NCBI RefSeq assembly: GCF_006345805.1
Contig: NC_043010.1
Location: forward strand, 31,372,001 to 31,436,000
DNA: 64,000 nucleotides
DNA from: Octopus sinensis
Taxonomy: Eukaryota
Reading direction: 5' to 3'
Under the pieces are notes generated by a model. It was given only the letters and a program-made list of their open reading frames with translations. It made no database searches and was not told the DNA's origin. The translations under genes were made by a program, and so were the position numbers. Below, in pieces: positions 16,623 to 46,744 of this stretch (positions within the stretch are counted from its first letter, which is position 1; each line of letters starts with the position of its first letter).

Positions 16623-16997
16623 ACTTCACTGATGAGGTCTAATAATACTGAAATATGTCCAGAGTTGTCTCCCATACTCAACAAAAGGATTAAAATAATA
16701 TTAGTCGTTCAGCTAATGATGTCATTTCTTCACTGCATAATTCTAATTAGATTTTTGGGGGAGATTCTCACTTTATTAAATATGCTAACACTAACTTAAC
16801 TATTGTTTTTTTCATGCAGATGACGTCTCTGAGTAATTAACTACAGTGAATTATTTTTTTAAATATTTAAATATTTTCACATCTCCTTGTGTACACTGTT
16901 GTACATCTACTTAGTGATTCTCTCAACAATACACCAGCAAGTATGGTGACGTCTGTTATACTGTGGAAATCTAATAAAACTGAAACATGTCTGAAGT
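16623..16997 (+). ncRNA. Two degenerate hammerhead motifs in a 332-bp tandem duplication
   Basis: Copy 1: ACUUCA-CUGAUGA-GGU(CUAAUAAU)ACU-GAA-AUAUGU-C-CAGAGU. Copy 2: GUUAUA-CUGUGGA-AAU..ACU-GAA-ACAUGU-C-UGAAGU. Confidence 0.55.
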
Positions 16998-25674: not shown

Positions 25675-27891
25675 CATCATCATCATCATCATTTAGCGTC
25701 CGTTTTCCATGCTAGCATGGGTTGGACGGTTCAACTGGGGTCTGGGGAGCCCGAAGGCTGCACCAGGCCAGTCAGATCTGGCAGTGTTTCTACAGCTGGA
25801 TGCCCTTCCTAACGCCAACCACTCCGAGAGTGTAGTGGGTGATTTTATGTGCCACCGACACAGATGCCAGACGAGGCTGGCGAACGGCCACGCTCGGATG
25901 GTGTTTTTTATGTGCCACCGACACAGGTGCCAGACGAGGCTGGCAGACGGCCACGCTCGGATGGTGTTTTTATGTGCCACCGACACAGGTGCCAGATGAG
26001 GCTGGCGGACGGCCACGATCGGATGGTGTTTGTTACGTCCCCAAAGCACGGAGGCCAGTCTATGTGGTACTGGCTACAGCCACATTCGGATGATTTTCTT
26101 GTGTGCCACCGGCACTGGTACCACAAAGATACAAATTCCATTGATGTTCATCTATTTTGATTTGTTTTGATTTTCACTTGCCTCAACAGGTCTTCACAAG
26201 TGTCACAAGAAGGAAGGTATGCACAGGTGGACTGACTACGTCCCAGGTAGGGGCCACGGGTTATGGCCTGACTAGTCTTGCCGGGTCTTCGGATGGTGTT
26301 TTTATGTGCCACCGACACAGGTGCCAGATGAGGCTGGCGAACGGCCACGATCGGATGGTGTTTGTTACGTGCCCACAGCACGGAGGCCAGTCGATGCGGT
26401 ACTGGTTACGGCCACGTTCGGATGGTTTTCTTGTGTGCCACCGGCACTGGTACCACAAAGATACAAATTCCATTGATGTTCATCTATTTTGATTTGATTT
26501 GATTTGATTTTCACTTGCCTCAACAGGTCTTCACAAGTGTCACAAGAAGGAAGGAAGGTATGCACAGGTGGACTGACTACGTCCCAGGTAGGGGCCCCGG
26601 GTTATGGCCTGACTAGTCTTGCCGGGTCTTCGGTTGGTGTTTTTATGTTCCACCGACACAGGTGCCAGATGAGGCTGGCGAACGGCCACGATCGGATGGT
26701 GTTTGTTATGTGCCCACATCACAGAGGCCAGTCGGTGCGGTACTGGCTACGGCCACGTTCGGATGGTTTTCTTGCGTGCCACCGGTACTGGTACCACAAA
26801 GATACAAATTCCATTGATGTTCATCTATTTTGATTTGGTTTGATTTGATTTGATTTGATTTTCACTTGCCTCAACAGGTCTTCACAAGTGTCATAAGAAG
26901 GAAGGTATGCACAGGTGGACTGACTACGTCGCCGGGTCTTCGGATGGTGTTTTTATGTGCCACCGACACAGGTGCCAGATGAGGCTGGCGAACGGCCACG
27001 ATCAGATGGTGTTTGTTGTGCCCACAGCACGGAGGCTAGTCGATGCGGTACTGGCTACGGCCACGTTCGGATGGTTTCCATGTGTGCCACCGGTACTGGA
27101 ACCACAAAGATACAAATTCCATTGATGTTCATCTATTTTGATTTGGTTTGATTTTCACTTGCCTCAACAGGTCTTCACAAGTGTCACACGTGTCACACAC
27201 TTGCCTCAACAGGTCTCCACAAGTGTCACACACTTGCCTCTGCCTCAACAGGTCTTCACAAAGTGTCACACACTTGCCTCTGCCTCAACAGTTCTTCACA
27301 AGTGTCACACACTTGCCTCAACAGGTCTTCACAAGTGTCATAGGAGGGAAGGTATGCACAGGTGGACTGACTACGTCGCCGGGTCTTCGGATGGTGTTTT
27401 TATGTGCCACCGACACAGGTGCCAGATGAGGCTGGCGAACGGCCACGATCAGATGGTGTTTGTTGTGCCCACAGCACGGAGGCCAGTCGATGCGGTACTG
27501 GCTACGGCCACGTTCGGATGGTTTTCTTGTGTGCCACCGGTACTGGAACCACAAAGATACAAATTCCATTGATGTTCATCTATTTTGATTTGGTTTGATT
27601 TTCACTTGCCTCAACAGGTCTTCACAAGTGTCACACGTGTCATGCACTTGCCTCAACAGGTCTTCACAAGTGTCATAGGAGGGAAGGTATGCACAGGTGG
27701 ACTGACTACGTCGCCGGGTCTTCGGTTGGTGTTTTTATGTGCCACCGACACAGGTGCCAGATGAGGCTGGCGAACGGCCACGATCGGATGGTGTTTGTTG
27801 TGCCCACAGCACGGAGGCTAGTCGATGCGGTACTGGCTACGGCCACGTTTGGGTGGTTTTCTTGTGTGCCACCGGCACTGGTACCACAAAG
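25675..27891 (-). mobile_element. Concatemeric family-B element: six ~310-450-bp units, three 62-bp units, and an RTE-type tail with (GAT)n
   Basis: Anchor gatacaaattccattgatg recurs near 26128, 26460, 26801, 27109, 27556 and 27891. A 30-bp subrepeat lies at 27155-27340. Tail ...catgctagcatggaaaacggacgctaaatgatgatg. Confidence 0.85.
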
Positions 27892-33957: not shown

Positions 33958-35190
33958 TCATCATCATCATCATCATCATCATTTAACGTCCGCTTTCCAT
34001 GCTAGCATGGGTTGGACGGTTCAACTGGGGTCTGGGGAGCCCGAAAGCTGCACCAGTCCAGTCAGATCTGGCAGTGTTTCTACAGCTGGATGCCCTTCCT
34101 AACGCCAACCACTCCGAGAGTGTAGTGGGTGATTTTATGTGCCACCGACACAGGTGCCAGACGAGGCTGACAAACGGCCACGCTCGGATGGTGTTTTTAT
34201 GTGCCACCGACACAGGTGCCAGACGAGGCTGGCAGACGGCCACGCTCGGATGGTGTTTTTATGTGCCACCGACACAGGTGCCAGACGAGGCTGGCAGACG
34301 GCCACGCTCGGATGGTGTTTTTATGTGCCACCGACACAGGTGCCAGACGAGGCTGGCAGACGGCCACGCTCGGATGGTGTTTTTATGTGCCACCGACACA
34401 GGTGCCAGATGAGGCTGGCAAACGGCCACGATCGGATGGTGCTTGTTACGTGCCCACAGCACGGAGGCCAGTCGATGCGGTACTGGCTACGGCCACGTTC
34501 GGATGGTTTTCTTATGTGCCACGTGCCACCGGCACTGGTACCGCAAAAATACAAATTCCATTGATGTTCATCTATTTTGATTTGTTTTGATTTGATTTTC
34601 ACTTGCCTCAACAGGTCTTCACAAGTGTCACAAGAAGGAAGGTATGCACAGGTGGACTGACTACGTCCCAGGTAGGGGCCATGGGTTATGGCCTGACTAG
34701 TCTTGCCGGGTCTTCGGATGGTGTTTTTATGTGCCACCGACACAGGTGCTAGATGAGGCTGGCGAACGGCCACGATCGGATGGTGTTTGTCATGTGCCCA
34801 CCGCACTGACTACGGCACTGATGGATTTCTTGTGTGCCACAGGCACTGGTACCACAAGATACAAATTCCATTGATGTTCATCTATTTTGTCTATTTTGAT
34901 TTGATTTTCACTTGCCTCAACCGGTCTTCACAAGTGTCACAAGAAGGAAGGAAGGTATGCACAGGTGGACTGACTAGTCTTGCCGGGTCTTCGGAAGGTG
35001 TTTTTATGTGCACCGACACAGGTGCCAGATGAGGCTGGCGAACGGCCATGATCGGATGGTGTTTGTTACGTGCCCACAGCACGGAGGCCGGTCGATGCGG
35101 AACTGGCTACGGCCACGTTCGGATGGTTCTCATGTGTGCCACCGGCACTGGTACCACAAAGTGTGTGCCACCGGCACTGGTACCACAAAG
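33958..35190 (-). mobile_element. Second concatemeric family-B element (five 62-bp units plus ~3 large units)
   Basis: Same tail and units as 25675-27891. 62-bp units start at 34137, 34199, 34261, 34323 and 34385. Confidence 0.85.
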
Positions 35191-35939: not shown

Positions 35940-38060
35940 TTTGGAAACTAGCTTTCCACCAGACTATCTATCAATCTGGTAGGCACAGAAACTAGATTGA
36001 CTACAGAAGACAAAATAGACAGTTGTGAATGCAAAGTTCTTCCCTGGTGAAGAATGTACAACCTAACATAGGTTAAGGTTAGTGACATCAGACTGATAGC
36101 TAGAAAAACTCAAGAGATACAAACCAATCTGGAAAATATGGAAGCTTTAAGAACCATTTAATGGACAGAAATTTAGAGAAGTACTAGTTGAAGTATTTGA
36201 TAAAAAGGAGGAGATAGAAATGTATAACATAGAGGACAACTGGAAGTTCTTATGAGATAATCTACTGAAGTCTGCAGAACAAATTTGTGGCTGGTGTAAA
36301 TTCTCAGCCTGAGTGAGTGTGACACAGATGGAACAGTGAGGTAGACAGAATCATAAAAGAGACATGTTTGGAGAGACTGGAAGAATGGGGGCAGCAGAGA
36401 ATTATATCTGGTAGCTACAAGTGAAGCTAGGTGACAGGTATATTTAGCAAAAACAGAAGCAGAAAAGAAGAGGTTTGCGAATAGCATGGGGCTCAGAGGC
36501 ATGAGGGATTCTAGACTGCAAGGCAATGTATCAAAGAAAATCATAATGTGGAAGAGAAGTATGTACAGATGGATAAGGGAACACTTGCACTTAGTGATTC
36601 TGAAAAGAAAGATATATAGAAGTGCTGGGAGGAAGCAAGTCTTCTCAACATGTATCCAACAGAAGGACCAACCATTCTAGTTAACAACAAGATAAATTAA
36701 GGATATGAAAATGAAAAGGTCCTAGACTATCAGGAGTTACTACTGAGATTCTTAAAATATTTGTTGGTATATCTATCAGGCTGCATAGGAAAGTGTCACA
36801 CTCTGACTCTTGTAGTATCATCATATTTAATTGTTACAAGAGTAAAGATGCATTAGTGAGAAGAAATTACTGAGGTATTAAATTGCTGGAAAAGGAGTAG
36901 ATAAAAATTCCATGGTGTATACAATGCAAACTATAGAAACACATGGAGTGCAGTGGTATCAGAAAAGAAAAAAGAGAAAGTAGATTACAAATGGTAGATG
37001 TACAGGATCAGTAAGCACTAAGAGAACACAGGAAGTAATTTTTTTTCAAATGCCTGGGATACGTAGAAGTAATAGGTGGTTTCTATTATCTATGCAACCT
37101 TGTGAGCAGTGGAGGAGGATGTTCCCGAAAGTATAGATGCTAGGATAAGAACCAACTGGAAAAATTCAGAGAGGTATTAATTCTATTGGTAACAAAAGAC
37201 CTCTCAGAGTGAAAGGCAGATTGTATGAAGAGCAATACTACATCAAAGGGAGATATGAGCCATAAGTGCAGAGCTAGCATGCTTCACTGGATGTGCAATG
37301 TCAGTGAGCATAAATAACCAAGTATAAATAAGAGAAAAATTGTGTAGACAAGGAATCATATGTAGTGTGCGAAAGAGACAACTGCACTGGCATGGTAATA
37401 TGATATGTATAGATGGGGACAGCTGTATGAAGAAGTGCAAACTGCTTAATATGAATGAAGTACGTGGAAGAAAGTGACTCAGGAAGACAAGGGATGAAAT
37501 TGTGAAGGCTGATTTCAGGACTTTGAGCCTTACAGAAGAGATGAGTAAGGACCAAGATGATTGGCGACATGTGGTGCTTGAGAAAACCTAACCATCTCAG
37601 TGAAACTGAGATTTTGGAAGCATAGCTGTGATACCAGTGCCGGTGGCACGTAAGCGAACCATCTGAACGTGGCCATTGCCAGCGCCGCTCCGACAGGCCT
37701 CTGTGCCGGTGGCACGTAAAAAGCACCATCCGATCATGGCCGTTACCAGCCTCGCCTGGCCCCCATGCCAGTGGCACGTAAAAAGCACCATCCGATCGTG
37801 GCTGTTGCCAGCCTCGCCTGGCCCCCGTGCCGGTGGCACATAAAAAGCACCATCTGACCGTGGCTGTTTGTCAGCTGTGCCGGTGGCACATAAAAAGCAC
37901 CCACTACACTCACGGAGTGATTGGCATTAGGAAGGCATCCAGCCGTAGAAACATTGCCAGATCAGACTGGGCCTGGTGCAGCCTTCTGGCTTCCCAGACC
38001 CCAGTTGAACTGTCCAACCCATGCTAGCATGGAAAGCGGATGCTAAATGATGATGATGAA
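35940..38060 (+). mobile_element. Decayed RTE LINE running directly into a family-B sequence (37620-38060)
   Basis: Fragmented RT-linker and C-terminal homology (...RKR*LHWHG...GRLRKTRDEIVKAD...WRHVVLEKT), then ~60-bp hairpin repeats and a (GAT)n tail. Confidence 0.75.
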
Positions 38061-39884: not shown

Positions 39885-39958
39885 CTGCAAAAGTGGCCGA
39901 GGAACAGCAAGTTCTTTCAGGGTTTTGTGGTCAATGACATTCCGAAGGGCATCAAAAC
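39885..39958 (-). CDS. EXOC4: EXOC4 exon, (G)FDALRNVIDHKTLKELAVPRPLLQ
   Basis: Acceptor tattcag, donor gtatta, 74 nt, phase 1-0. Matches human DPLK...VQRPLLQ. Confidence 0.92.
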
Positions 39959-40763: not shown

Positions 40764-40804
<41 letters not shown>

Positions 40805-40877
40805 GCATTAAATATGTACATATACATGCATTATATATACATGTCTACATATATATATATACGCACATATATACAAG

Positions 40878-40919
<42 letters not shown>

Positions 40920-41135
40920 ACACATTATATATATATTTATATACACACATATATATATATATAAATTAACACAATATATCTGATTAATAACATCTGTTAT
41001 GATTGTGCGATGGTGGTGAGCGATAATAATTCACCGTTCTAAAATACGGGTATATATATACATATGTGTGTGTGTGTATATATCTATATATGAATAAATG
41101 AAAGAATGGAGTCGAACGAAGATGTTAACAAAATT

Positions 41136-41228
41136 CCTTTACTCTCGACATATGTTTCGAAGACCACATGATTTCATTCCAAAGGAATAAAGGGTGTATG
41201 ATGCAATCTTCTCATCAGGAAAGAAAGG
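41136..41228 (-). ncRNA. Type I hammerhead ribozyme, PLE-like, canonical core
   Basis: Minus strand reads CCUUUCUUUC-CUGAUGA-GAAGA...UCUUC-GAA-ACAUAUGU-C-GAGAGUAAAGG. Helix I is 10 bp with a 1-nt bulge, helix II up to 11 bp, helix III palindromic, GUC site. Confidence 0.8.
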
Positions 41229-42492
41229 GAGCCTCTCTTGGCAACAAGACAAACAAAAATTTCGATGACTGCCTACATGGTAAACAAAACGACAATAATT
41301 CTCGCCTTCAACTCAAAATATTCTGAGATGTATAAACTATCCATTTTTTCTGTAAATATTACAAATTTTCTCACCAAACTATTGCACTTCCTTATGTCTT
41401 TAACATGTCCTTCTACCAAAGACTGTATATATATACATGTAATGTGACAATTTGCGACAACCAATAATTAACGCAACCAAATTTCCAATAATATATTTGT
41501 TTTATTCTATTCTGCCAATTTTTCCAAATATTCTCATCACACTATTGAACTTCTCTGTTACCAAACACTATATTTATACATGTAATGTGACAATTATGTA
41601 TAAAAAAACATTTTTGAATTCATAATATTCAATGTGACAATTATGTAAAAAACTTTTTTGAACCCATATTATTCAATGTTACTTTTGACAATCTTTTACC
41701 AAAGAGTGAAACCGGTTAAGTAAATAAACATCTTTTAAATTGCATTTTCAAACCTTCTTTCGTATATAATTCCACTCGTGCGATACCCCACAACTCAACT
41801 TTTATATATATATATATATATATATATACGTATATACACTGCATGTATATCAGTTACAGAATATATACAATGCATCCCTGTGTTGAAAGAAACAACTGAA
41901 GGATAACCAAGCATAAAACACTGCCTTAGAAAACCTATCCAATCCATACCAGCATAAAAAAGTGGACATATGATGATGACATAATTTTTATATTCATGTT
42001 AGAAATCATTAACATTGGTGGAATACCAAGTAAAATGTACTTAGTAATGTTTTGTTACATTCTGACTTTCAGTCCTGTCAAGATCAATAATGACTTTCAA
42101 CCTTATAAAGTCAATAAAATATAACCCATTCCACTGATATACAGCCATTTACCTCATCAAATGTCCACTATCACAAAAATTTCTGGTCTTGTGCCTATAG
42201 AAAATTCAGAATGGACTGCTGTGAAATTTACATTGTGAATTCAAATCCAATCAAGATCAGCTCTACCATTTATTAGTCCAATGTTTGAAACAAAACTGGA
42301 GTCAATTTTGTTAACTTCTCTTATAAATTTGTGGTCTAGTTAAAAGTTAGCCAAATTACTATTATTTCATGATCTCTATTCCTGATAATGTTGCACTGGG
42401 TGACCTTCAAGAATTACCTAGAAAATGCATATGTATGTTCCAGTAGGTGAGAAGAAAAAGAGACAGAAAGATGAAAAATGGCATCTAATTAC

Positions 42493-42593
42493 CTTTTGTT
42501 GCAGAAGAAATGCTACTGGAGACATTATAGTGGACTTGGTAGAGGAAGATGTTCTTAACAAACTCTGTAACAAATGCTTGCAGACTTGACGAA
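42493..42593 (-). CDS. EXOC4: EXOC4 exon, SSSLQAFVTEFVKNIFLYQVHYNVSSSISSATK
   Basis: Acceptor tttttag, donor gtaatt, 101 nt, phase 2-1. Matches human LREFLTVYIKNIFLNQV. Confidence 0.9.
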
Positions 42594-42767: not shown

Positions 42768-44115
42768 CAGGGGTCGCCAAACTTTTTCAACCATCAGTCC
42801 CCATTAACCACTTCTCCTTCTGCATTGACCCCCCCCCCTTCCTTTAGCCACTTCTTCTGCATTGATCAACCTCCTCATTTAAAATACCTTAAAACCCTAC
42901 CCTACCATATCTTACATGCATACTGGGTACTGATACTGGCAATTAAAATGTTAGCTAAAATATACATGTACGACAAATTAAGAAATTCTATTGCAGATGA
43001 CTCACTTTTTACATTTAAAACTACATGCATGAATATACAGTATTAAACTTGTCAGGCCCAATTACTTGTTTTCTTCCCTTACCACTTTTTCCCATACTAC
43101 TACTTTCTTCCTAAGCCATACATTACAAGCCCATATCTGCACAGTCAACATCAAGTGTTGTTAATGCTCAGTTGTGTCATTTCATATGTAAAACCAAATA
43201 TCCTCTCATCTAACCAAACTATCACTCTTTCATATGTGTATTATATTTAGAACATCACATTTTCAGCCATACCACAACAATTGTCTCTCCAGCTCATACC
43301 CAACTTCTCTCTTGTTACTTGTACACTTGTGTTCTTTTACAAATTAACATTAAACCTTTAACTCTTGCAAAGAAACAAACTCTGTTGCCAATAGTTCTGC
43401 TTGTTTAAATATTACAGTTAAGGCCAACAACAGAGGTAAACACCTTCCTTACTTTAGATCAGGGGTTGCCAAAGGGGATCCGAGGGACACCCTAGGGGTC
43501 AGTGAGCAATTACAAGGGGTCAATGATAGCCAAGGGGTCGAACAGGGGTCAGCATGTGAAAGACTATCTCACCCAGATGAACTGCTTGAAATACTTAGTT
43601 AGCGCCATGAAACATGAGAAAACATGGTAAATTTTCACTGCAGCGAGAAGTCTGCTTTTGCTAACATTTGAGGCATGATGTCATATTCAGTATCATAATG
43701 GAAGATTGAGAGTTGTGATGATTGAGGGAATGTGGACTGTCAAGTGTTTACTTATAGAAATTGCCTGAACTTGGAGGAATGAGGTGATTTGAGATTAAAC
43801 CTGACTGACCTTCAGCCTGATATCAATGCCTTGACTCAGGATCACCATGCTCATACCTCACATTGATGTAGTCAATTTCAATAAAAGATATTCCAGCAAT
43901 ATGATGTGTTTTTGATATTTTCTAACCATGAAAACAATTTCATAAAAATTGAAAGTTTAATACTGTATATTCATGCAACTAGTTTTAAATGTAAAAAGTG
44001 AGTCATCTACAATAGAATTTCTTAATTTGTCGTACATGTATATTTTAGCTAACATTTTAATTGCCAGTATCAGTACCCAGTATGCATGTAAGATATGGTA
44101 GGGTAGGGTTTTAAG
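42768..44115. mobile_element. Two oppositely oriented pieces of a Buster-like hAT element
   Basis: CAGGGGTYGCCAAA termini at 42768 and 43460. C-terminus LRLNLTDLQPDINALTQDHHAHTSH*. ~163-bp inverted duplicate (42888-43050 / 43953-44115). Confidence 0.75.
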
Positions 44116-44727: not shown

Positions 44728-46744
44728 TTAGACAAATAAGTCTTGCAAACTACCAACCCTGGAGCAACCAACATAAAGCTGACCATGAGAAAAGCAAGGC
44801 TCAATTAAGTGCAAGCTAGTAAATTTCAAAGTCTGATCTTGAGCTTTATTAATAGACATTACGAAGCAAACTTGCACAGGGAATTGTGTTTGTTTGAACT
44901 GAAACAGCATGTCTGTTGGCTTTTGGAATTAAAATTTCCTCCCCAGAGGCACATCCACTGATGATGGTAGCTTCTATCTCATTAAGAGGTAATGTCTTTA
45001 CAATCAACATTGTCCCACTGCATAATTTAGGGGGATCTAAATTTCTTAGAAGCATTATTAGGACTCCTACCTTCAGAAAAAGTTTATGTGGAGGAATTCC
45101 AGGTGGCTCAAGAGAATTAAGAAACTCTGTTGGGTAATGAACAGCATGATTTTCATCAAGGACTGAATCAGCTGATTTGTACTCCTTAATAACTTTTGGA
45201 ATCTTATTCATTAATTCATGGTTAATCCTTGCTACTGTCTCGTTTTTGGAATTGAGAATTGCCCTTTCACACAACCATTTATGTGAATGGTACATCAACA
45301 TCAAAAAATCAAATGGAAATTGTAGTTGTGATACCTGTGCTGGTGGCACATAAAAAACACCATCCGAACGTGGCTGATGCCAGCGCTGCTTTGACTGGCT
45401 TCAATACTGGTGACACGTAAAAAGCACCAACCAATTGTGGGCATTGCCAGCCTCGCCTGGTACCTGTGCCAGTGGCATGTAAAAAGCATCCACTACACTC
45501 AGAGTGGTTGGCGTTAGGAAGGGCATCCAGCTGTAGAAACACTGCCAGATCAGACTGGAGCCTGGTGCAGCCTCCTGGCTTCCCAGACCCCGGTCGAACC
45601 GTCCAACCCATGCTAGCATGGAAAACGGACATTAAACGATGATGATGATGATCATCATCATCATCATTATTACTTAAGTCTGAAAATATCCTGTTCTTCA
45701 ATTCAGCTGGGGAATTCACCATGATAGCAATATGAGCCAAACTAATATCACTATTCCCATCAAATGCTACTTTCCCATTTCCTATTTGGAGGAGCCAGGT
45801 TGGAAACTGTTCTGCACATTGGTCCCCATGTTATAAAGCTCACACATTAGTATTGAGGGAGAATTTCTATACTCCATAGGTGTGAATACTTAATGCATGC
45901 TTTTATTTCATCAGATCTTGTTTATCTCAGAATGAATGGTAATATCTGTCTGAAGTCTCCTGATAAAACTAATGTAACTCCTCCCATAGATTTATTGTTG
46001 CCCCTTATGTCCTGTAAGGTCTTAACAAGAGCTTCCATTGCACCTCTATGTGACATGGTGCATTCATCCCAAATGACCAGGCGGCATTGGCACAACACTT
46101 CTGCTGAACCTGAACCTTATGTTACAAATTGAACAATCATTTGTGACCGGGTTTAGCAGTAATTTAAAAGCAGAATGAGCTGTTCATCCTGTTGGGAGAA
46201 TGGTGGCAGCAAAGACAGATGATGCTACAGCAACTGCAATTCTTTTTTGTTGCCTTACCTTGAAGGGAAGCAATGTTGGTACAAATGTTTTAACTGTGCC
46301 ACCAGGAGCATGAAGAAATAAAATTCTTCTACTTTCTTCTCTGACTGACAAAATAATTTTATTATATGTACAGCATTGTTTCAGAAGAAGTTTAGGTTCA
46401 TGTTCATTCACAGATGCAGCCAATTCTGTGATGTCATAATTTGTCTCTCTTGCTATGTCTAATTTGACAGTTTGTTTTTGGTAGTCCAGAGCCAGACTCA
46501 TGCAAATATTTGCCTTAAGGCAGAATTGAAAAAAAGATGTTGCAAGTGAGATAGCAACTACAGTGGTGTTCAGACACTGGAAGTGGAAAAACTGTGAAAC
46601 GTATTGTTGTGTAACCTCTTCAAAATCACATTTAATCAGGTAGACTTCGCTGTAACTTAAATAGAGCTGATCAAATGTGTATAGAACAACCACCAAGTCA
46701 TGTAACCTGTAACGTACACTGTGTTCTGGACCCATGCAACACAC
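44728..46744 (-). mobile_element. Helitron RepHel remnant (PIF1 helicase domain)
   Basis: GGTVKTF (Walker A-like), IWDECTM, GDFRQIL, EFLNSLEPPGIPPH, QFPVQVCFVMSINKAQ, FSHGQLYV. Frameshifted. Confidence 0.92.
45300..45665 (+). mobile_element. Family-B copy nested in the Helitron remnant
   Basis: Same body and ...catgctagcatggaaaacggacattaaacgatgatg tail. Splits the helicase homology. Confidence 0.85.

What the first reader, a model, noticed from the sequence alone, without database searches (positions are those of the whole stretch)
41136..41228. Canonical hammerhead ribozyme in sense orientation inside an EXOC4 intron
Seen: every conserved core base (CUGAUGA, GAAA, GUC), G10.1-C11.1, a 10-bp helix I, an extended helix II with an inner AUUCC-UUU-GGAAU hairpin, and a perfectly palindromic helix III (ACAUAUGU). 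It is on the strand transcribed as EXOC4 pre-mRNA, between exons 42493-42593 and 39885-39958, next to a (TA)n tract. Known: this architecture is typical of PLE-associated HHRs, which need dimerisation. Inference: co-transcriptional intron cleavage after 41147, possibly only when two RNAs pair, giving a concentration-dependent switch.
Basis: partly seen in the sequence, partly recalled or inferred. Interest (0 to 1): 0.8.

Follow-up and report, generated by a model that had tools for sequence, protein, structure and literature searches.

The report
Retrotransposon hammerhead ribozyme in octopus intron
The hammerhead ribozyme motif is real, but it is the tail end of a broken copy of a Penelope-like jumping gene present in thousands of copies in this octopus genome, so it is an ordinary transposon passenger in an EXOC4 intron, not a dedicated gene switch.

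Summary
On the minus strand, 41228..41136 carries a complete type I hammerhead: CUGAUGA, GAAA, GUC, a G10.1-C11.1 pair, a 10-bp helix I with one bulged U, a 53-nt helix II and the palindrome ACAUAUGU as helix III. C17 is at 41147. It lies in sense orientation in an EXOC4 intron; the flanking exons are 100% identical to Octopus EXOC4.

It is not a locus-specific device. It sits in a 214-bp, 5'-truncated 3'-terminal fragment (41298..41085) that abuts a TA-rich microsatellite. A 30-mer spanning the 3' half of the core occurs 46 times exactly and 3,263 times with up to 3 mismatches in the 2.72-Gb genome; the reversed control gives 0.

Copies share one 3' end and have staggered 5' ends. Long copies show repeat-ORF-repeat units of about 3.2 kb with one hammerhead per repeat. 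[quoted passage not shown] That is a Penelope-like element.

The window copy differs from its subfamily consensus at 2 of 214 positions. It is absent from the orthologous intron of Argonauta hians. Rfam models do not detect it. Folding favours the active shape only as a dimer, and published PLE hammerheads barely cleave as single copies. A regulatory switch is unsupported.

The parts
41085..41298 (-). 214-bp 5'-truncated 3'-terminal fragment of a Penelope-like retrotransposon (part of its terminal repeat, pLTR). This is the unit that is repeated genome-wide.
   Evidence: BLAST of the window copy against 29 other genomic copies. All alignments end at the same 3' position (41085, some running on through TA repeats). 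The 5' ends are staggered (41298, 41294, 41279, 41264, 41244, 41217, 41198). Longer copies extend 1.5 kb or more upstream.
41136..41228 (-). Type I hammerhead ribozyme motif (helix I open, helices II and III closed).
   Evidence: Direct reading. Helices I and II appear in the minimum-free-energy fold.
41212..41218 (-). Core box C3-A9, CUGAUGA.
   Evidence: All 14 core bases are intact in 57 of 66 aligned family copies.
41159..41211 (-). Extended helix II (53 nt), opening with G10.1-C11.1 and ending in the inner UUUAUUCC-UUU-GGAAUGAA hairpin.
   Evidence: sub-hairpin -14.4 kcal/mol. Variation among copies falls mostly in its distal part.
41148..41158 (-). G12 A13 A14, then the helix III palindrome ACAUAUGU (A15.1 to U16.1).
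   Evidence: As a monomer helix III is 2 bp plus a 4-nt loop and adds +0.6 kcal/mol. As an intermolecular duplex it is 8 bp, -7.0 kcal/mol.
41146..41147 (-). Predicted scissile bond: after C17 (41147) and before G1.1 (41146).
   Evidence: Position follows from the hammerhead core numbering applied. Cleavage itself was not tested.
41046..41092 (.). TA/TG-rich microsatellite abutting the 3' end of the element; the likely insertion target.
   Evidence: Some copies align on into the TA tract. The Argonauta homologue also ends in (TA)n. (TA)n is listed as a preferred PLE target in PMC8557442.
42491..42593 (-). EXOC4 exon upstream of the host intron (about residues 521-554).
39885..39958 (-). EXOC4 exon downstream of the host intron (about residues 555-578).

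Best explanation
The motif is the hammerhead ribozyme module carried in the terminal repeat (pLTR) of a Penelope-like retrotransposon (PLE) family that is very abundant in this octopus genome. [quoted passage not shown]

The window holds a 214-bp copy made by target-primed reverse transcription that stopped early. It inserted into a TA microsatellite in an EXOC4 intron, by chance in the sense orientation.

At the level of the transposon family the ribozyme is kept. It probably processes longer-than-unit PLE transcripts, acting as a dimer through the palindromic helix III, perhaps with help from the PLE protein.

At this locus it is a recent passenger. As a lone copy with a 2-bp helix III it is expected to cleave EXOC4 pre-mRNA poorly or not at all.

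Shown: repeat membership, truncation series, PLE architecture, recent insertion, absence from one ortholog. Inferred: the family-level role of the ribozyme and the low activity of the single copy.
For: Copy number and spread:
- At least 45 copies at 94-100% identity on many chromosomes, out of 1,144 first-look candidates.
- 46 exact and 3,263 matches within 3 mismatches to a 30-mer across the 3' half of the core; reversed control 0.

Retroelement signature:
- One fixed 3' end and staggered 5' ends.
- More endonuclease-end candidates than RT candidates (15,503 against 8,276 first-look).
- Many head-to-head inverted pairs. One inverted truncated copy lies beside an upstream repeat (L066).

Full units:
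- L064 has two sense hammerheads 3,189-3,190 bp apart in direct repeats flanking the ORF pieces.

Protein:
- A 670-aa open frame (L071) contains GGLYRDD and NFLDITLNL.
- It has 81 homologues. Their consensus shows a CxC..C..C linker, then VVY..YIG..R..H..E and a C..C....C.H pattern.
- A confident model of a homologue (pLDDT 86) best matches telomerase RTs, then retron, group II intron, R2 and LINE-1 RTs.
- 8 of 56 homologues hit Pfam GIY-YIG and 2 hit RVT_1.

Same layout in another octopod:
- An Argonauta hians homologue has perfect 255-nt direct repeats 3,217 nt apart. Each carries CUGACGA...GAAA plus the palindrome ACAAUUGU, and the 3' repeat ends in (TA)n.
- Hammerhead-like motifs also lie beside the ORF of homologues in L081, L082 and L084.

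Recent and not conserved at the locus:
- 2 differences in 214 nt from the young-subfamily consensus.
- No match in the orthologous Argonauta intron.

Activity:
- The monomer's best fold (-23.0 kcal/mol) ties up part of the core. The canonical monomer fold is -20.8.
- The dimer's best fold (-53.4, against 2 x -23.0) forms the 8-bp helix III and leaves both cores open.

Literature:
- PLE hammerheads lie in pLTRs, occur mostly as single motifs from truncated PLEs or as nearby opposite-strand pairs, show no detectable cleavage as single motifs and weak cleavage as dimers (PMC4209133).
- An Anolis PLE hammerhead cleaved only when PLE protein was added (PMC11167929).
Against: - No Rfam hammerhead model scores the motif, even at E<=10.
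- Pfam does not recognise the octopus ORF itself. Sequence search of the PDB found nothing. RT and endonuclease identity therefore rest on motifs, homologues and a predicted fold of a homologue at 35-37% identity.
- Copies within the family are too alike to give covariation.
- The ortholog test used one rather distant octopod. A closer Octopus species could not be fetched.
- No cleavage or expression data exist here, so some activity in the intron cannot be excluded.
- The PLE clade (Neptune-like or other) was not resolved.
Confidence: 0.9

Rival explanations
1. One reading: the motif has been taken over by the host as a co-transcriptional, concentration-dependent switch that cleaves the EXOC4 intron and tunes EXOC4 output.
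For: - The core is intact and in sense orientation in the pre-mRNA.
- The dimer fold is favoured by about 7 kcal/mol and exposes both cores.
- The window copy has a U at 41171 that restores an A-U pair in helix II, where the family majority has C.
Against: - Thousands of near-identical copies.
- The copy is 2 differences from its consensus, so it is too young to show host selection.
- It is absent from the Argonauta ortholog.
- It is the only copy in the window.
- Inserted copies elsewhere carry core mutations such as GGAA for GAAA, so they decay freely.
- Single PLE hammerheads are inactive in vitro (PMC4209133, PMC11167929).
- From my own knowledge, not checked here: slow intronic ribozyme cleavage need not disturb splicing because exons stay tethered to the polymerase.
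Confidence: 0.04
2. It is a unit of a non-autonomous 'retrozyme' (a small tandem repeat with hammerheads) that yields circular RNAs, not a fragment of an autonomous PLE.
For: Animal retrozymes carry type I hammerheads with short palindromic helix III and are proposed to derive from PLE pLTRs (PMC7229834 abstract; bioRxiv 10.64898/2026.07.22.740005 abstract).
Against: - The window has a single copy, not a tandem array.
- The copies form a continuous 5'-truncation series leading into a coding PLE.
- Nearby pairs are inverted, not head-to-tail.
Confidence: 0.03
3. The motif is a chance match to the hammerhead consensus in AT-rich intron sequence.
For: - No Rfam match.
- The fold energy z-score is only -1.29.
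- A loose core pattern gives 0.19 chance hits per window, and one such chance hit exists at 16629-16659.
Against: - The same motif is kept in thousands of copies.
- It sits in the terminal repeats of an RT/GIY-YIG element.
- In the aligned copies core positions vary at 1.1%, against 3.9% for the rest of the motif and 7.4% for the rest of the unit.
- Homologous elements in other species carry differently spelled hammerheads at the same place.
Confidence: 0.01

Closest known systems
Hammerhead ribozymes of Penelope-like elements (Cervera and de la Pena 2014, PMC4209133), especially the variants with a small palindromic helix III reported in Drosophila, rotifers, shrimps and mosquitos
   Same: - Type I topology with the full core and G10.1-C11.1.
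- Short palindromic helix III that implies a dimeric active form.
- Location in the terminal repeats of an RT plus GIY-YIG element.
- Mostly dispersed single motifs from truncated copies, plus nearby opposite-strand pairs.
- Thousands of copies per genome.
   Different: - Helix II is far longer (53 nt, about 21 bp with mismatches) than the 6-8 bp described.
- Helix I is longer (10 bp against 2-5 bp).
- There is no unpaired base between A9 and G10.1.
- The host is a cephalopod. My one literature search on this turned up no explicit description of a PLE hammerhead in a cephalopod.
Canonical C-terminal EN+ PLE clades with a Zn-finger-like RT-EN linker (Neptune, Nematis; Craig et al. 2021, PMC8557442)
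   Same: - Single ORF of about 700-800 aa with RT, a Cys-rich linker and a GIY-YIG domain containing a C..C....C.H pattern.
- Pseudo-LTRs, and an inverted 5'-truncated copy beside the upstream repeat.
- Insertion next to (TA)n.
- A hammerhead in the repeat.
   Different: - Clade membership was not tested by phylogeny.
- The linker reads CxC-x5-C-x5-C, not the stated CX2-5CxxC.
- Pfam RVT_1 does not recognise the octopus RT.
[quoted passage not shown]
   Different: Those are low-copy and conserved at orthologous positions across distant species, and they fold as stable monomers (from my own knowledge). This one is a young, high-copy transposon fragment, absent from the one ortholog checked, with an unstable monomeric helix III.
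Animal non-LTR retrozymes (PMC7229834; bioRxiv 10.64898/2026.07.22.740005)
   Same: Type I hammerhead with a dimer-type helix III; an evolutionary link to PLE terminal repeats.
   Different: Retrozymes are head-to-tail tandem arrays that give circular RNAs. Here there is a single truncated unit. In vertebrates such arrays are reported to be excluded from introns (abstract).

Membership tests
Hammerhead ribozyme (type I) | Conserved core: C3 U4 G5 A6 N7 G8 A9, G12 A13 A14, A15.1-U16.1, H17 | tested here: met
   CUGAUGA at 41218-41212, GAAA at 41158-41155, U16.1 at 41148, C17 at 41147.
Hammerhead ribozyme (type I) | Three helices around the core, with helix I open at its ends and a G10.1-C11.1 pair | tested here: met
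   Helix I is 10 bp with one bulge and helix II is 53 nt; both are in the best fold. Helix III is only 2 bp as a monomer and 8 bp as a dimer.
Hammerhead ribozyme (type I) | Match to the curated Rfam hammerhead covariance models | tested here: not met
   No hammerhead family reported at gathering score or at E<=10 on 40800-41600. The long helix II insert is a likely reason, but that was not tested.
Hammerhead ribozyme (type I) | Site-specific self-cleavage after position 17 | not testable with these tools
   Needs in vitro transcription or RNA-end sequencing.
Hammerhead ribozyme (type I) | Compensatory base changes that keep the helices | tested here: inconclusive
   66 family copies are too similar, and variation in distal helix II is mostly uncompensated. 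Homologous elements of other species have differently spelled helices that still pair by eye, but these were not aligned or scored.
Penelope-like element (C-terminal EN+) | Reverse transcriptase related to telomerase RT | tested here: met
   YRDD motif in the octopus ORF. The model of homologue P0002 has pLDDT 86, and its top Foldseek PDB hits are telomerase RTs at E about 5e-8. RVT_1 is found in 2 of 56 homologues. Pfam on the octopus ORF itself is negative.
Penelope-like element (C-terminal EN+) | GIY-YIG endonuclease C-terminal to the RT, with Zn-finger-like motifs | tested here: met
   Consensus of homologues: CNCR....CPL.G.C, then VVY...YIG...R...H...E and C.LC....CRH. PF01541 is found in 8 of 56 homologues, best E 6.3e-5. 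The octopus copies carry the matching C-terminal piece in a shifted frame.
Penelope-like element (C-terminal EN+) | Pseudo-LTRs (direct terminal repeats from partial tandems), each carrying a hammerhead | tested here: met
   L064 has hammerheads 3,189 nt apart in direct repeats. Argonauta L080 has 255-nt perfect repeats 3,217 nt apart, each with a hammerhead-like motif. L082 holds tandem ORFs with the motif between them.
Penelope-like element (C-terminal EN+) | 5'-truncated copies and inverted head-to-head arrangements | tested here: met
   Staggered 5' ends with a fixed 3' end. Inverted pairs 75-2,300 bp apart. An inverted truncated copy beside the upstream repeat in L066.
Conserved, host-exapted intronic hammerhead (HH9/HH10 type) | Presence at the orthologous intron position in other species | tested here: not met
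   The Argonauta hians EXOC4 intron (L079 23643-28901) has no match to the 217-nt unit. Only one, fairly distant, species could be tested.
Conserved, host-exapted intronic hammerhead (HH9/HH10 type) | Single or low copy number in the genome | tested here: not met
   3,263 sites within 3 mismatches of the 30-mer.
Animal non-LTR retrozyme | Head-to-tail tandem repeats of a short unit, each with a hammerhead | tested here: not met
   One copy in the window. Neighbouring pairs elsewhere are inverted.

The most novel reading that the evidence does not exclude
Sense-strand PLE hammerhead fragments, present in thousands of copies and here inside EXOC4 pre-mRNA, might become cleavable in trans. That would happen when PLE transcripts supply dimer partners through the shared palindromic helix III, or when PLE protein is abundant (it was needed for cleavage in the Anolis element). 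Bursts of transposon expression would then lower the output of host genes that carry such fragments.
Probability: 0.04. Interest if true: 0.7.

Novelty: new member of a known kind. Interest (0 to 1): 0.15.

Why it matters
A textbook-looking ribozyme inside an essential gene turns out to be transposon debris. Scans for regulatory ribozymes in invertebrate genomes need to check copy number and repeat context first.

The finding also documents a very abundant hammerhead-bearing Penelope-like family in an octopus genome. Its helix II is unusually long, and the Rfam hammerhead models miss it. Many octopus transcripts may therefore carry unrecognised hammerhead motifs.

If such fragments cleaved in vivo they could link transposon activity to host gene output, but nothing here shows that.

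Tried and rejected
- Rfam scans found no hammerhead. The only hits were miRNA-like matches to TA/TG microsatellite, which are low-complexity artefacts well below gathering scores.
- Pfam on the octopus ORF pieces and on the 670-aa ORF gave nothing useful. Pfam on five single homologues gave only one weak GIY-YIG hit.
- Sequence and profile searches of the PDB were empty. The fold search was needed instead.
- Covariation within the family is uninformative because the copies are 85-100% identical.
- An automated constrained fold meant to confirm three-way junctions recovered only the Argonauta motif. The others, including the window copy, were judged by eye and with a hand-built structure.
- A second core-like match at 16629-16659(+) lacks helix I pairing and G10.1-C11.1. 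It fits the chance expectation of 0.19 per window, so I rejected it.
- The look-up of the Octopus EXOC4 protein in another assembly found no record, so a close-species presence/absence test was not possible.
More divergent subfamilies of this genome could not be fetched for a structure alignment.

Full report
**The observation.** On the minus strand, window 41228..41136 reads CCUUUCUUUC-CUGAUGA-(53 nt)-GAAA-CAUAUGUC-GAGAGUAAAGG. With standard hammerhead numbering:
- C3-A9 is 41218-41212.
- G10.1 (41211) pairs with C11.1 (41159).
- G12-A14 and A15.1 are 41158-41155.
- The palindrome ACAUAUGU is 41155-41148.
- C17 is 41147.
- Helix I is 10 bp with one bulged U (41141).

Helix II is a long irregular hairpin: 11 proximal bp (three G-U), a C/C mismatch, 2 bp, a 6-nt asymmetric loop, then UUUAUUCC-UUU-GGAAUGAA. 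RNAfold recovers helices I and II.

No Rfam hammerhead model matches at gathering score or at E<=10 on 40800-41600. The listed hits are miRNA-like matches to TA/TG microsatellite.

**Gene context.** Three minus-strand reading frames, joined, are 100% identical to 'exocyst complex component 4 isoform X2 [Octopus vulgaris]'. tblastn of that protein places residues 376-957 on the minus strand from 51516 to 19745. The motif lies in sense orientation in the intron between exons 42593-42491 and 39958-39885.

The genome is 2.72 Gb in 13,516 contigs, an Octopus of the vulgaris/sinensis group. The exact species is my inference.

**It is a repeat.**
- The 106-nt region has at least 45 copies at 94-100% identity on many chromosomes, from 1,144 first-look candidates of which 40 were scored.
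- The 30-mer GGTCTTCGAAACATATGTCGAGAGTAAAGG occurs 46 times exactly and 3,263 times with up to 3 mismatches. The reversed control gives 0.
- Only one copy lies in the window.

BLAST among 30 loci shows one shared 3' end (window 41085, then TA repeats). The 5' ends are staggered: 41298, 41294, 41279, 41264, 41244, 41217, 41198. Other copies run on 1.5 kb or more upstream. The window copy is therefore a 214-bp 5'-truncated fragment. Many copies sit in inverted head-to-head pairs 75-2,300 bp apart.

**What the full element is.**
- In L064 two sense hammerheads lie 3,189 nt apart inside direct repeats.
- Between them are ORF pieces, frame-broken in that copy, with GGLYRDDCLLY, NFLDITLNL...HKPS..SNH and the start of a GIY-type motif.
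- L066 has an inverted truncated copy beside the upstream repeat.
- L071 has a 670-aa open frame.

Pfam and PDB sequence searches do not recognise this protein. It does have 81 homologues at 28-39% identity, including an Argonauta hians protein. Their consensus shows GLYRDDGL, NFLD.TLNL, a CNCR....CPL.G.C linker, and VVY..YIG..R..H..E with C.LC....CRH.

An AlphaFold model of homologue P0002 built with this alignment is confident (pLDDT 86.4, pTM 0.84). Its best PDB fold matches are telomerase RTs (E about 5e-8). Retron, group II intron, R2 and LINE-1 RTs follow.

Scanned one by one, 8 of 56 homologues hit Pfam GIY-YIG (best 6.3e-5) and 2 hit RVT_1.

First-look candidates for the endonuclease end (15,503) outnumber those for the RT (8,276), as expected with 5' truncation.

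These features match Penelope-like elements as described in PMC8557442: pseudo-LTRs, inverted truncated copies, (TA)n targets, and hammerheads in pLTRs of canonical clades. They also match PMC4209133: hammerheads in both repeats, most motifs single and from truncated PLEs, some in nearby opposite-strand pairs.

**The same design elsewhere.**
- The Argonauta homologue (L080) has perfect 255-nt direct repeats 3,217 nt apart. Each carries CUGACGA, a long helix II, GAAA and the palindrome ACAAUUGU. The 3' repeat ends in (TA)n.
- Homologues from environmental assemblies also have hammerhead-like motifs beside the ORF: L081 with a long helix II and the palindrome AUAAAUUUAU, L082 between tandem ORFs, and L084.
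- The helices are spelled differently but still pair by eye. I did not score this formally.

**Selection acts on the family, not on the locus.**
- In 66 aligned copies the 14 core bases differ from consensus at 1.1% of cells. The figure is 3.9% for the rest of the motif and 7.4% for the rest of the unit. 57 of 66 copies keep all 14. Half of these copies were retrieved by the motif itself, which biases this figure.
- Individual copies with core-killing changes exist, for example GGAA for GAAA.
- The window copy differs from the young-subfamily consensus at 41239 and 41171 only, 2 of 214.
- The orthologous intron of Argonauta hians EXOC4 (L079 23643-28901) has no match to the unit.

**Likely mechanism.**
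- Thermodynamics favour a dimer. The monomer's best fold (-23.0 kcal/mol) pairs AUG of the core with CAU of helix III.
- The canonical monomer fold is -20.8, and its 2-bp helix III costs +0.6.
- Two copies fold to -53.4 with an 8-bp intermolecular helix III (-7.0 on its own) and both cores open.
- Published work agrees: single PLE hammerheads show no detectable cleavage, and dimers and trimers cleave weakly (PMC4209133).
- An Anolis PLE hammerhead cleaved only when PLE protein was added. It was not needed for insertion in vitro, and left no RNA-seq ends at the cut site (PMC11167929).

My reading is that the ribozyme serves, or rides on, the transposon's own RNA. The EXOC4 copy is a recent passenger with little or no activity on its own. 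A regulatory switch remains possible only as a low-probability side effect.

**Verdict.** Observation confirmed. Interpretation partly supported: motif, PLE link, strand and dimer idea are right, and the switch is not supported. This is a new member of a known kind and of low interest.

Noticed in passing
window 44728-46132, minus strand: Pieces of a PIF1-like helicase ORF lie in the neighbouring EXOC4 intron: Pfam PIF1 at E 5e-17 and Pif1_2B_dom at E 7e-15. They look like a decayed Helitron-type or PIF1-bearing transposon, interrupted by other repeats.
   Followed up: partly
window 42888-43050 and 43953-44115: A 163-nt inverted repeat pair, 98% complementary, with 902 nt between the arms, just upstream of the exon at 42593. 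It may mark the ends of a small DNA transposon or a foldback element.
   Followed up: partly
window 25838-26930 and 34128-34522 (similar pieces near 37300-37960 and 45300-45640): Tandem arrays with periods of 62-63 nt and 341 nt (91-93% matches), G+C-richer than their surroundings. They give the recurring 'HRHRCQTRLA' pseudo-ORFs on both strands. Probably a SINE-like or satellite repeat that is common in these introns.
   Followed up: partly
window 40800-41095: Rfam E-value hits to mir-297, mir-466 and mir-1277 (29.7-39.4 bits against gathering scores of 81-90) fall on TA/TG microsatellite on both strands. They are low-complexity artefacts.
   Followed up: yes
window 16629-16659, plus strand: CTGATGA...GAAA...GTC core-like string, antisense to EXOC4. 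It has no helix I pairing and no G10.1-C11.1, and it fits chance expectation (0.19 per window).
   Followed up: yes
L032 and L033 (G000:C27:17815000-17824000 and 17801300-17810300): Two 9-kb stretches 13.7 kb apart are 94% identical over their whole length, including a PLE copy. This is a local segmental duplication that carried the element along.
   Followed up: no
L031 7393-7652 and L071 ORF residues about 560-650: The linker between the RT and the endonuclease in the octopus family contains a long Asn/Ser-rich low-complexity stretch. This probably explains the 'GATA zinc finger domain-containing protein 14-like' name given to the Argonauta homologue.
   Followed up: no
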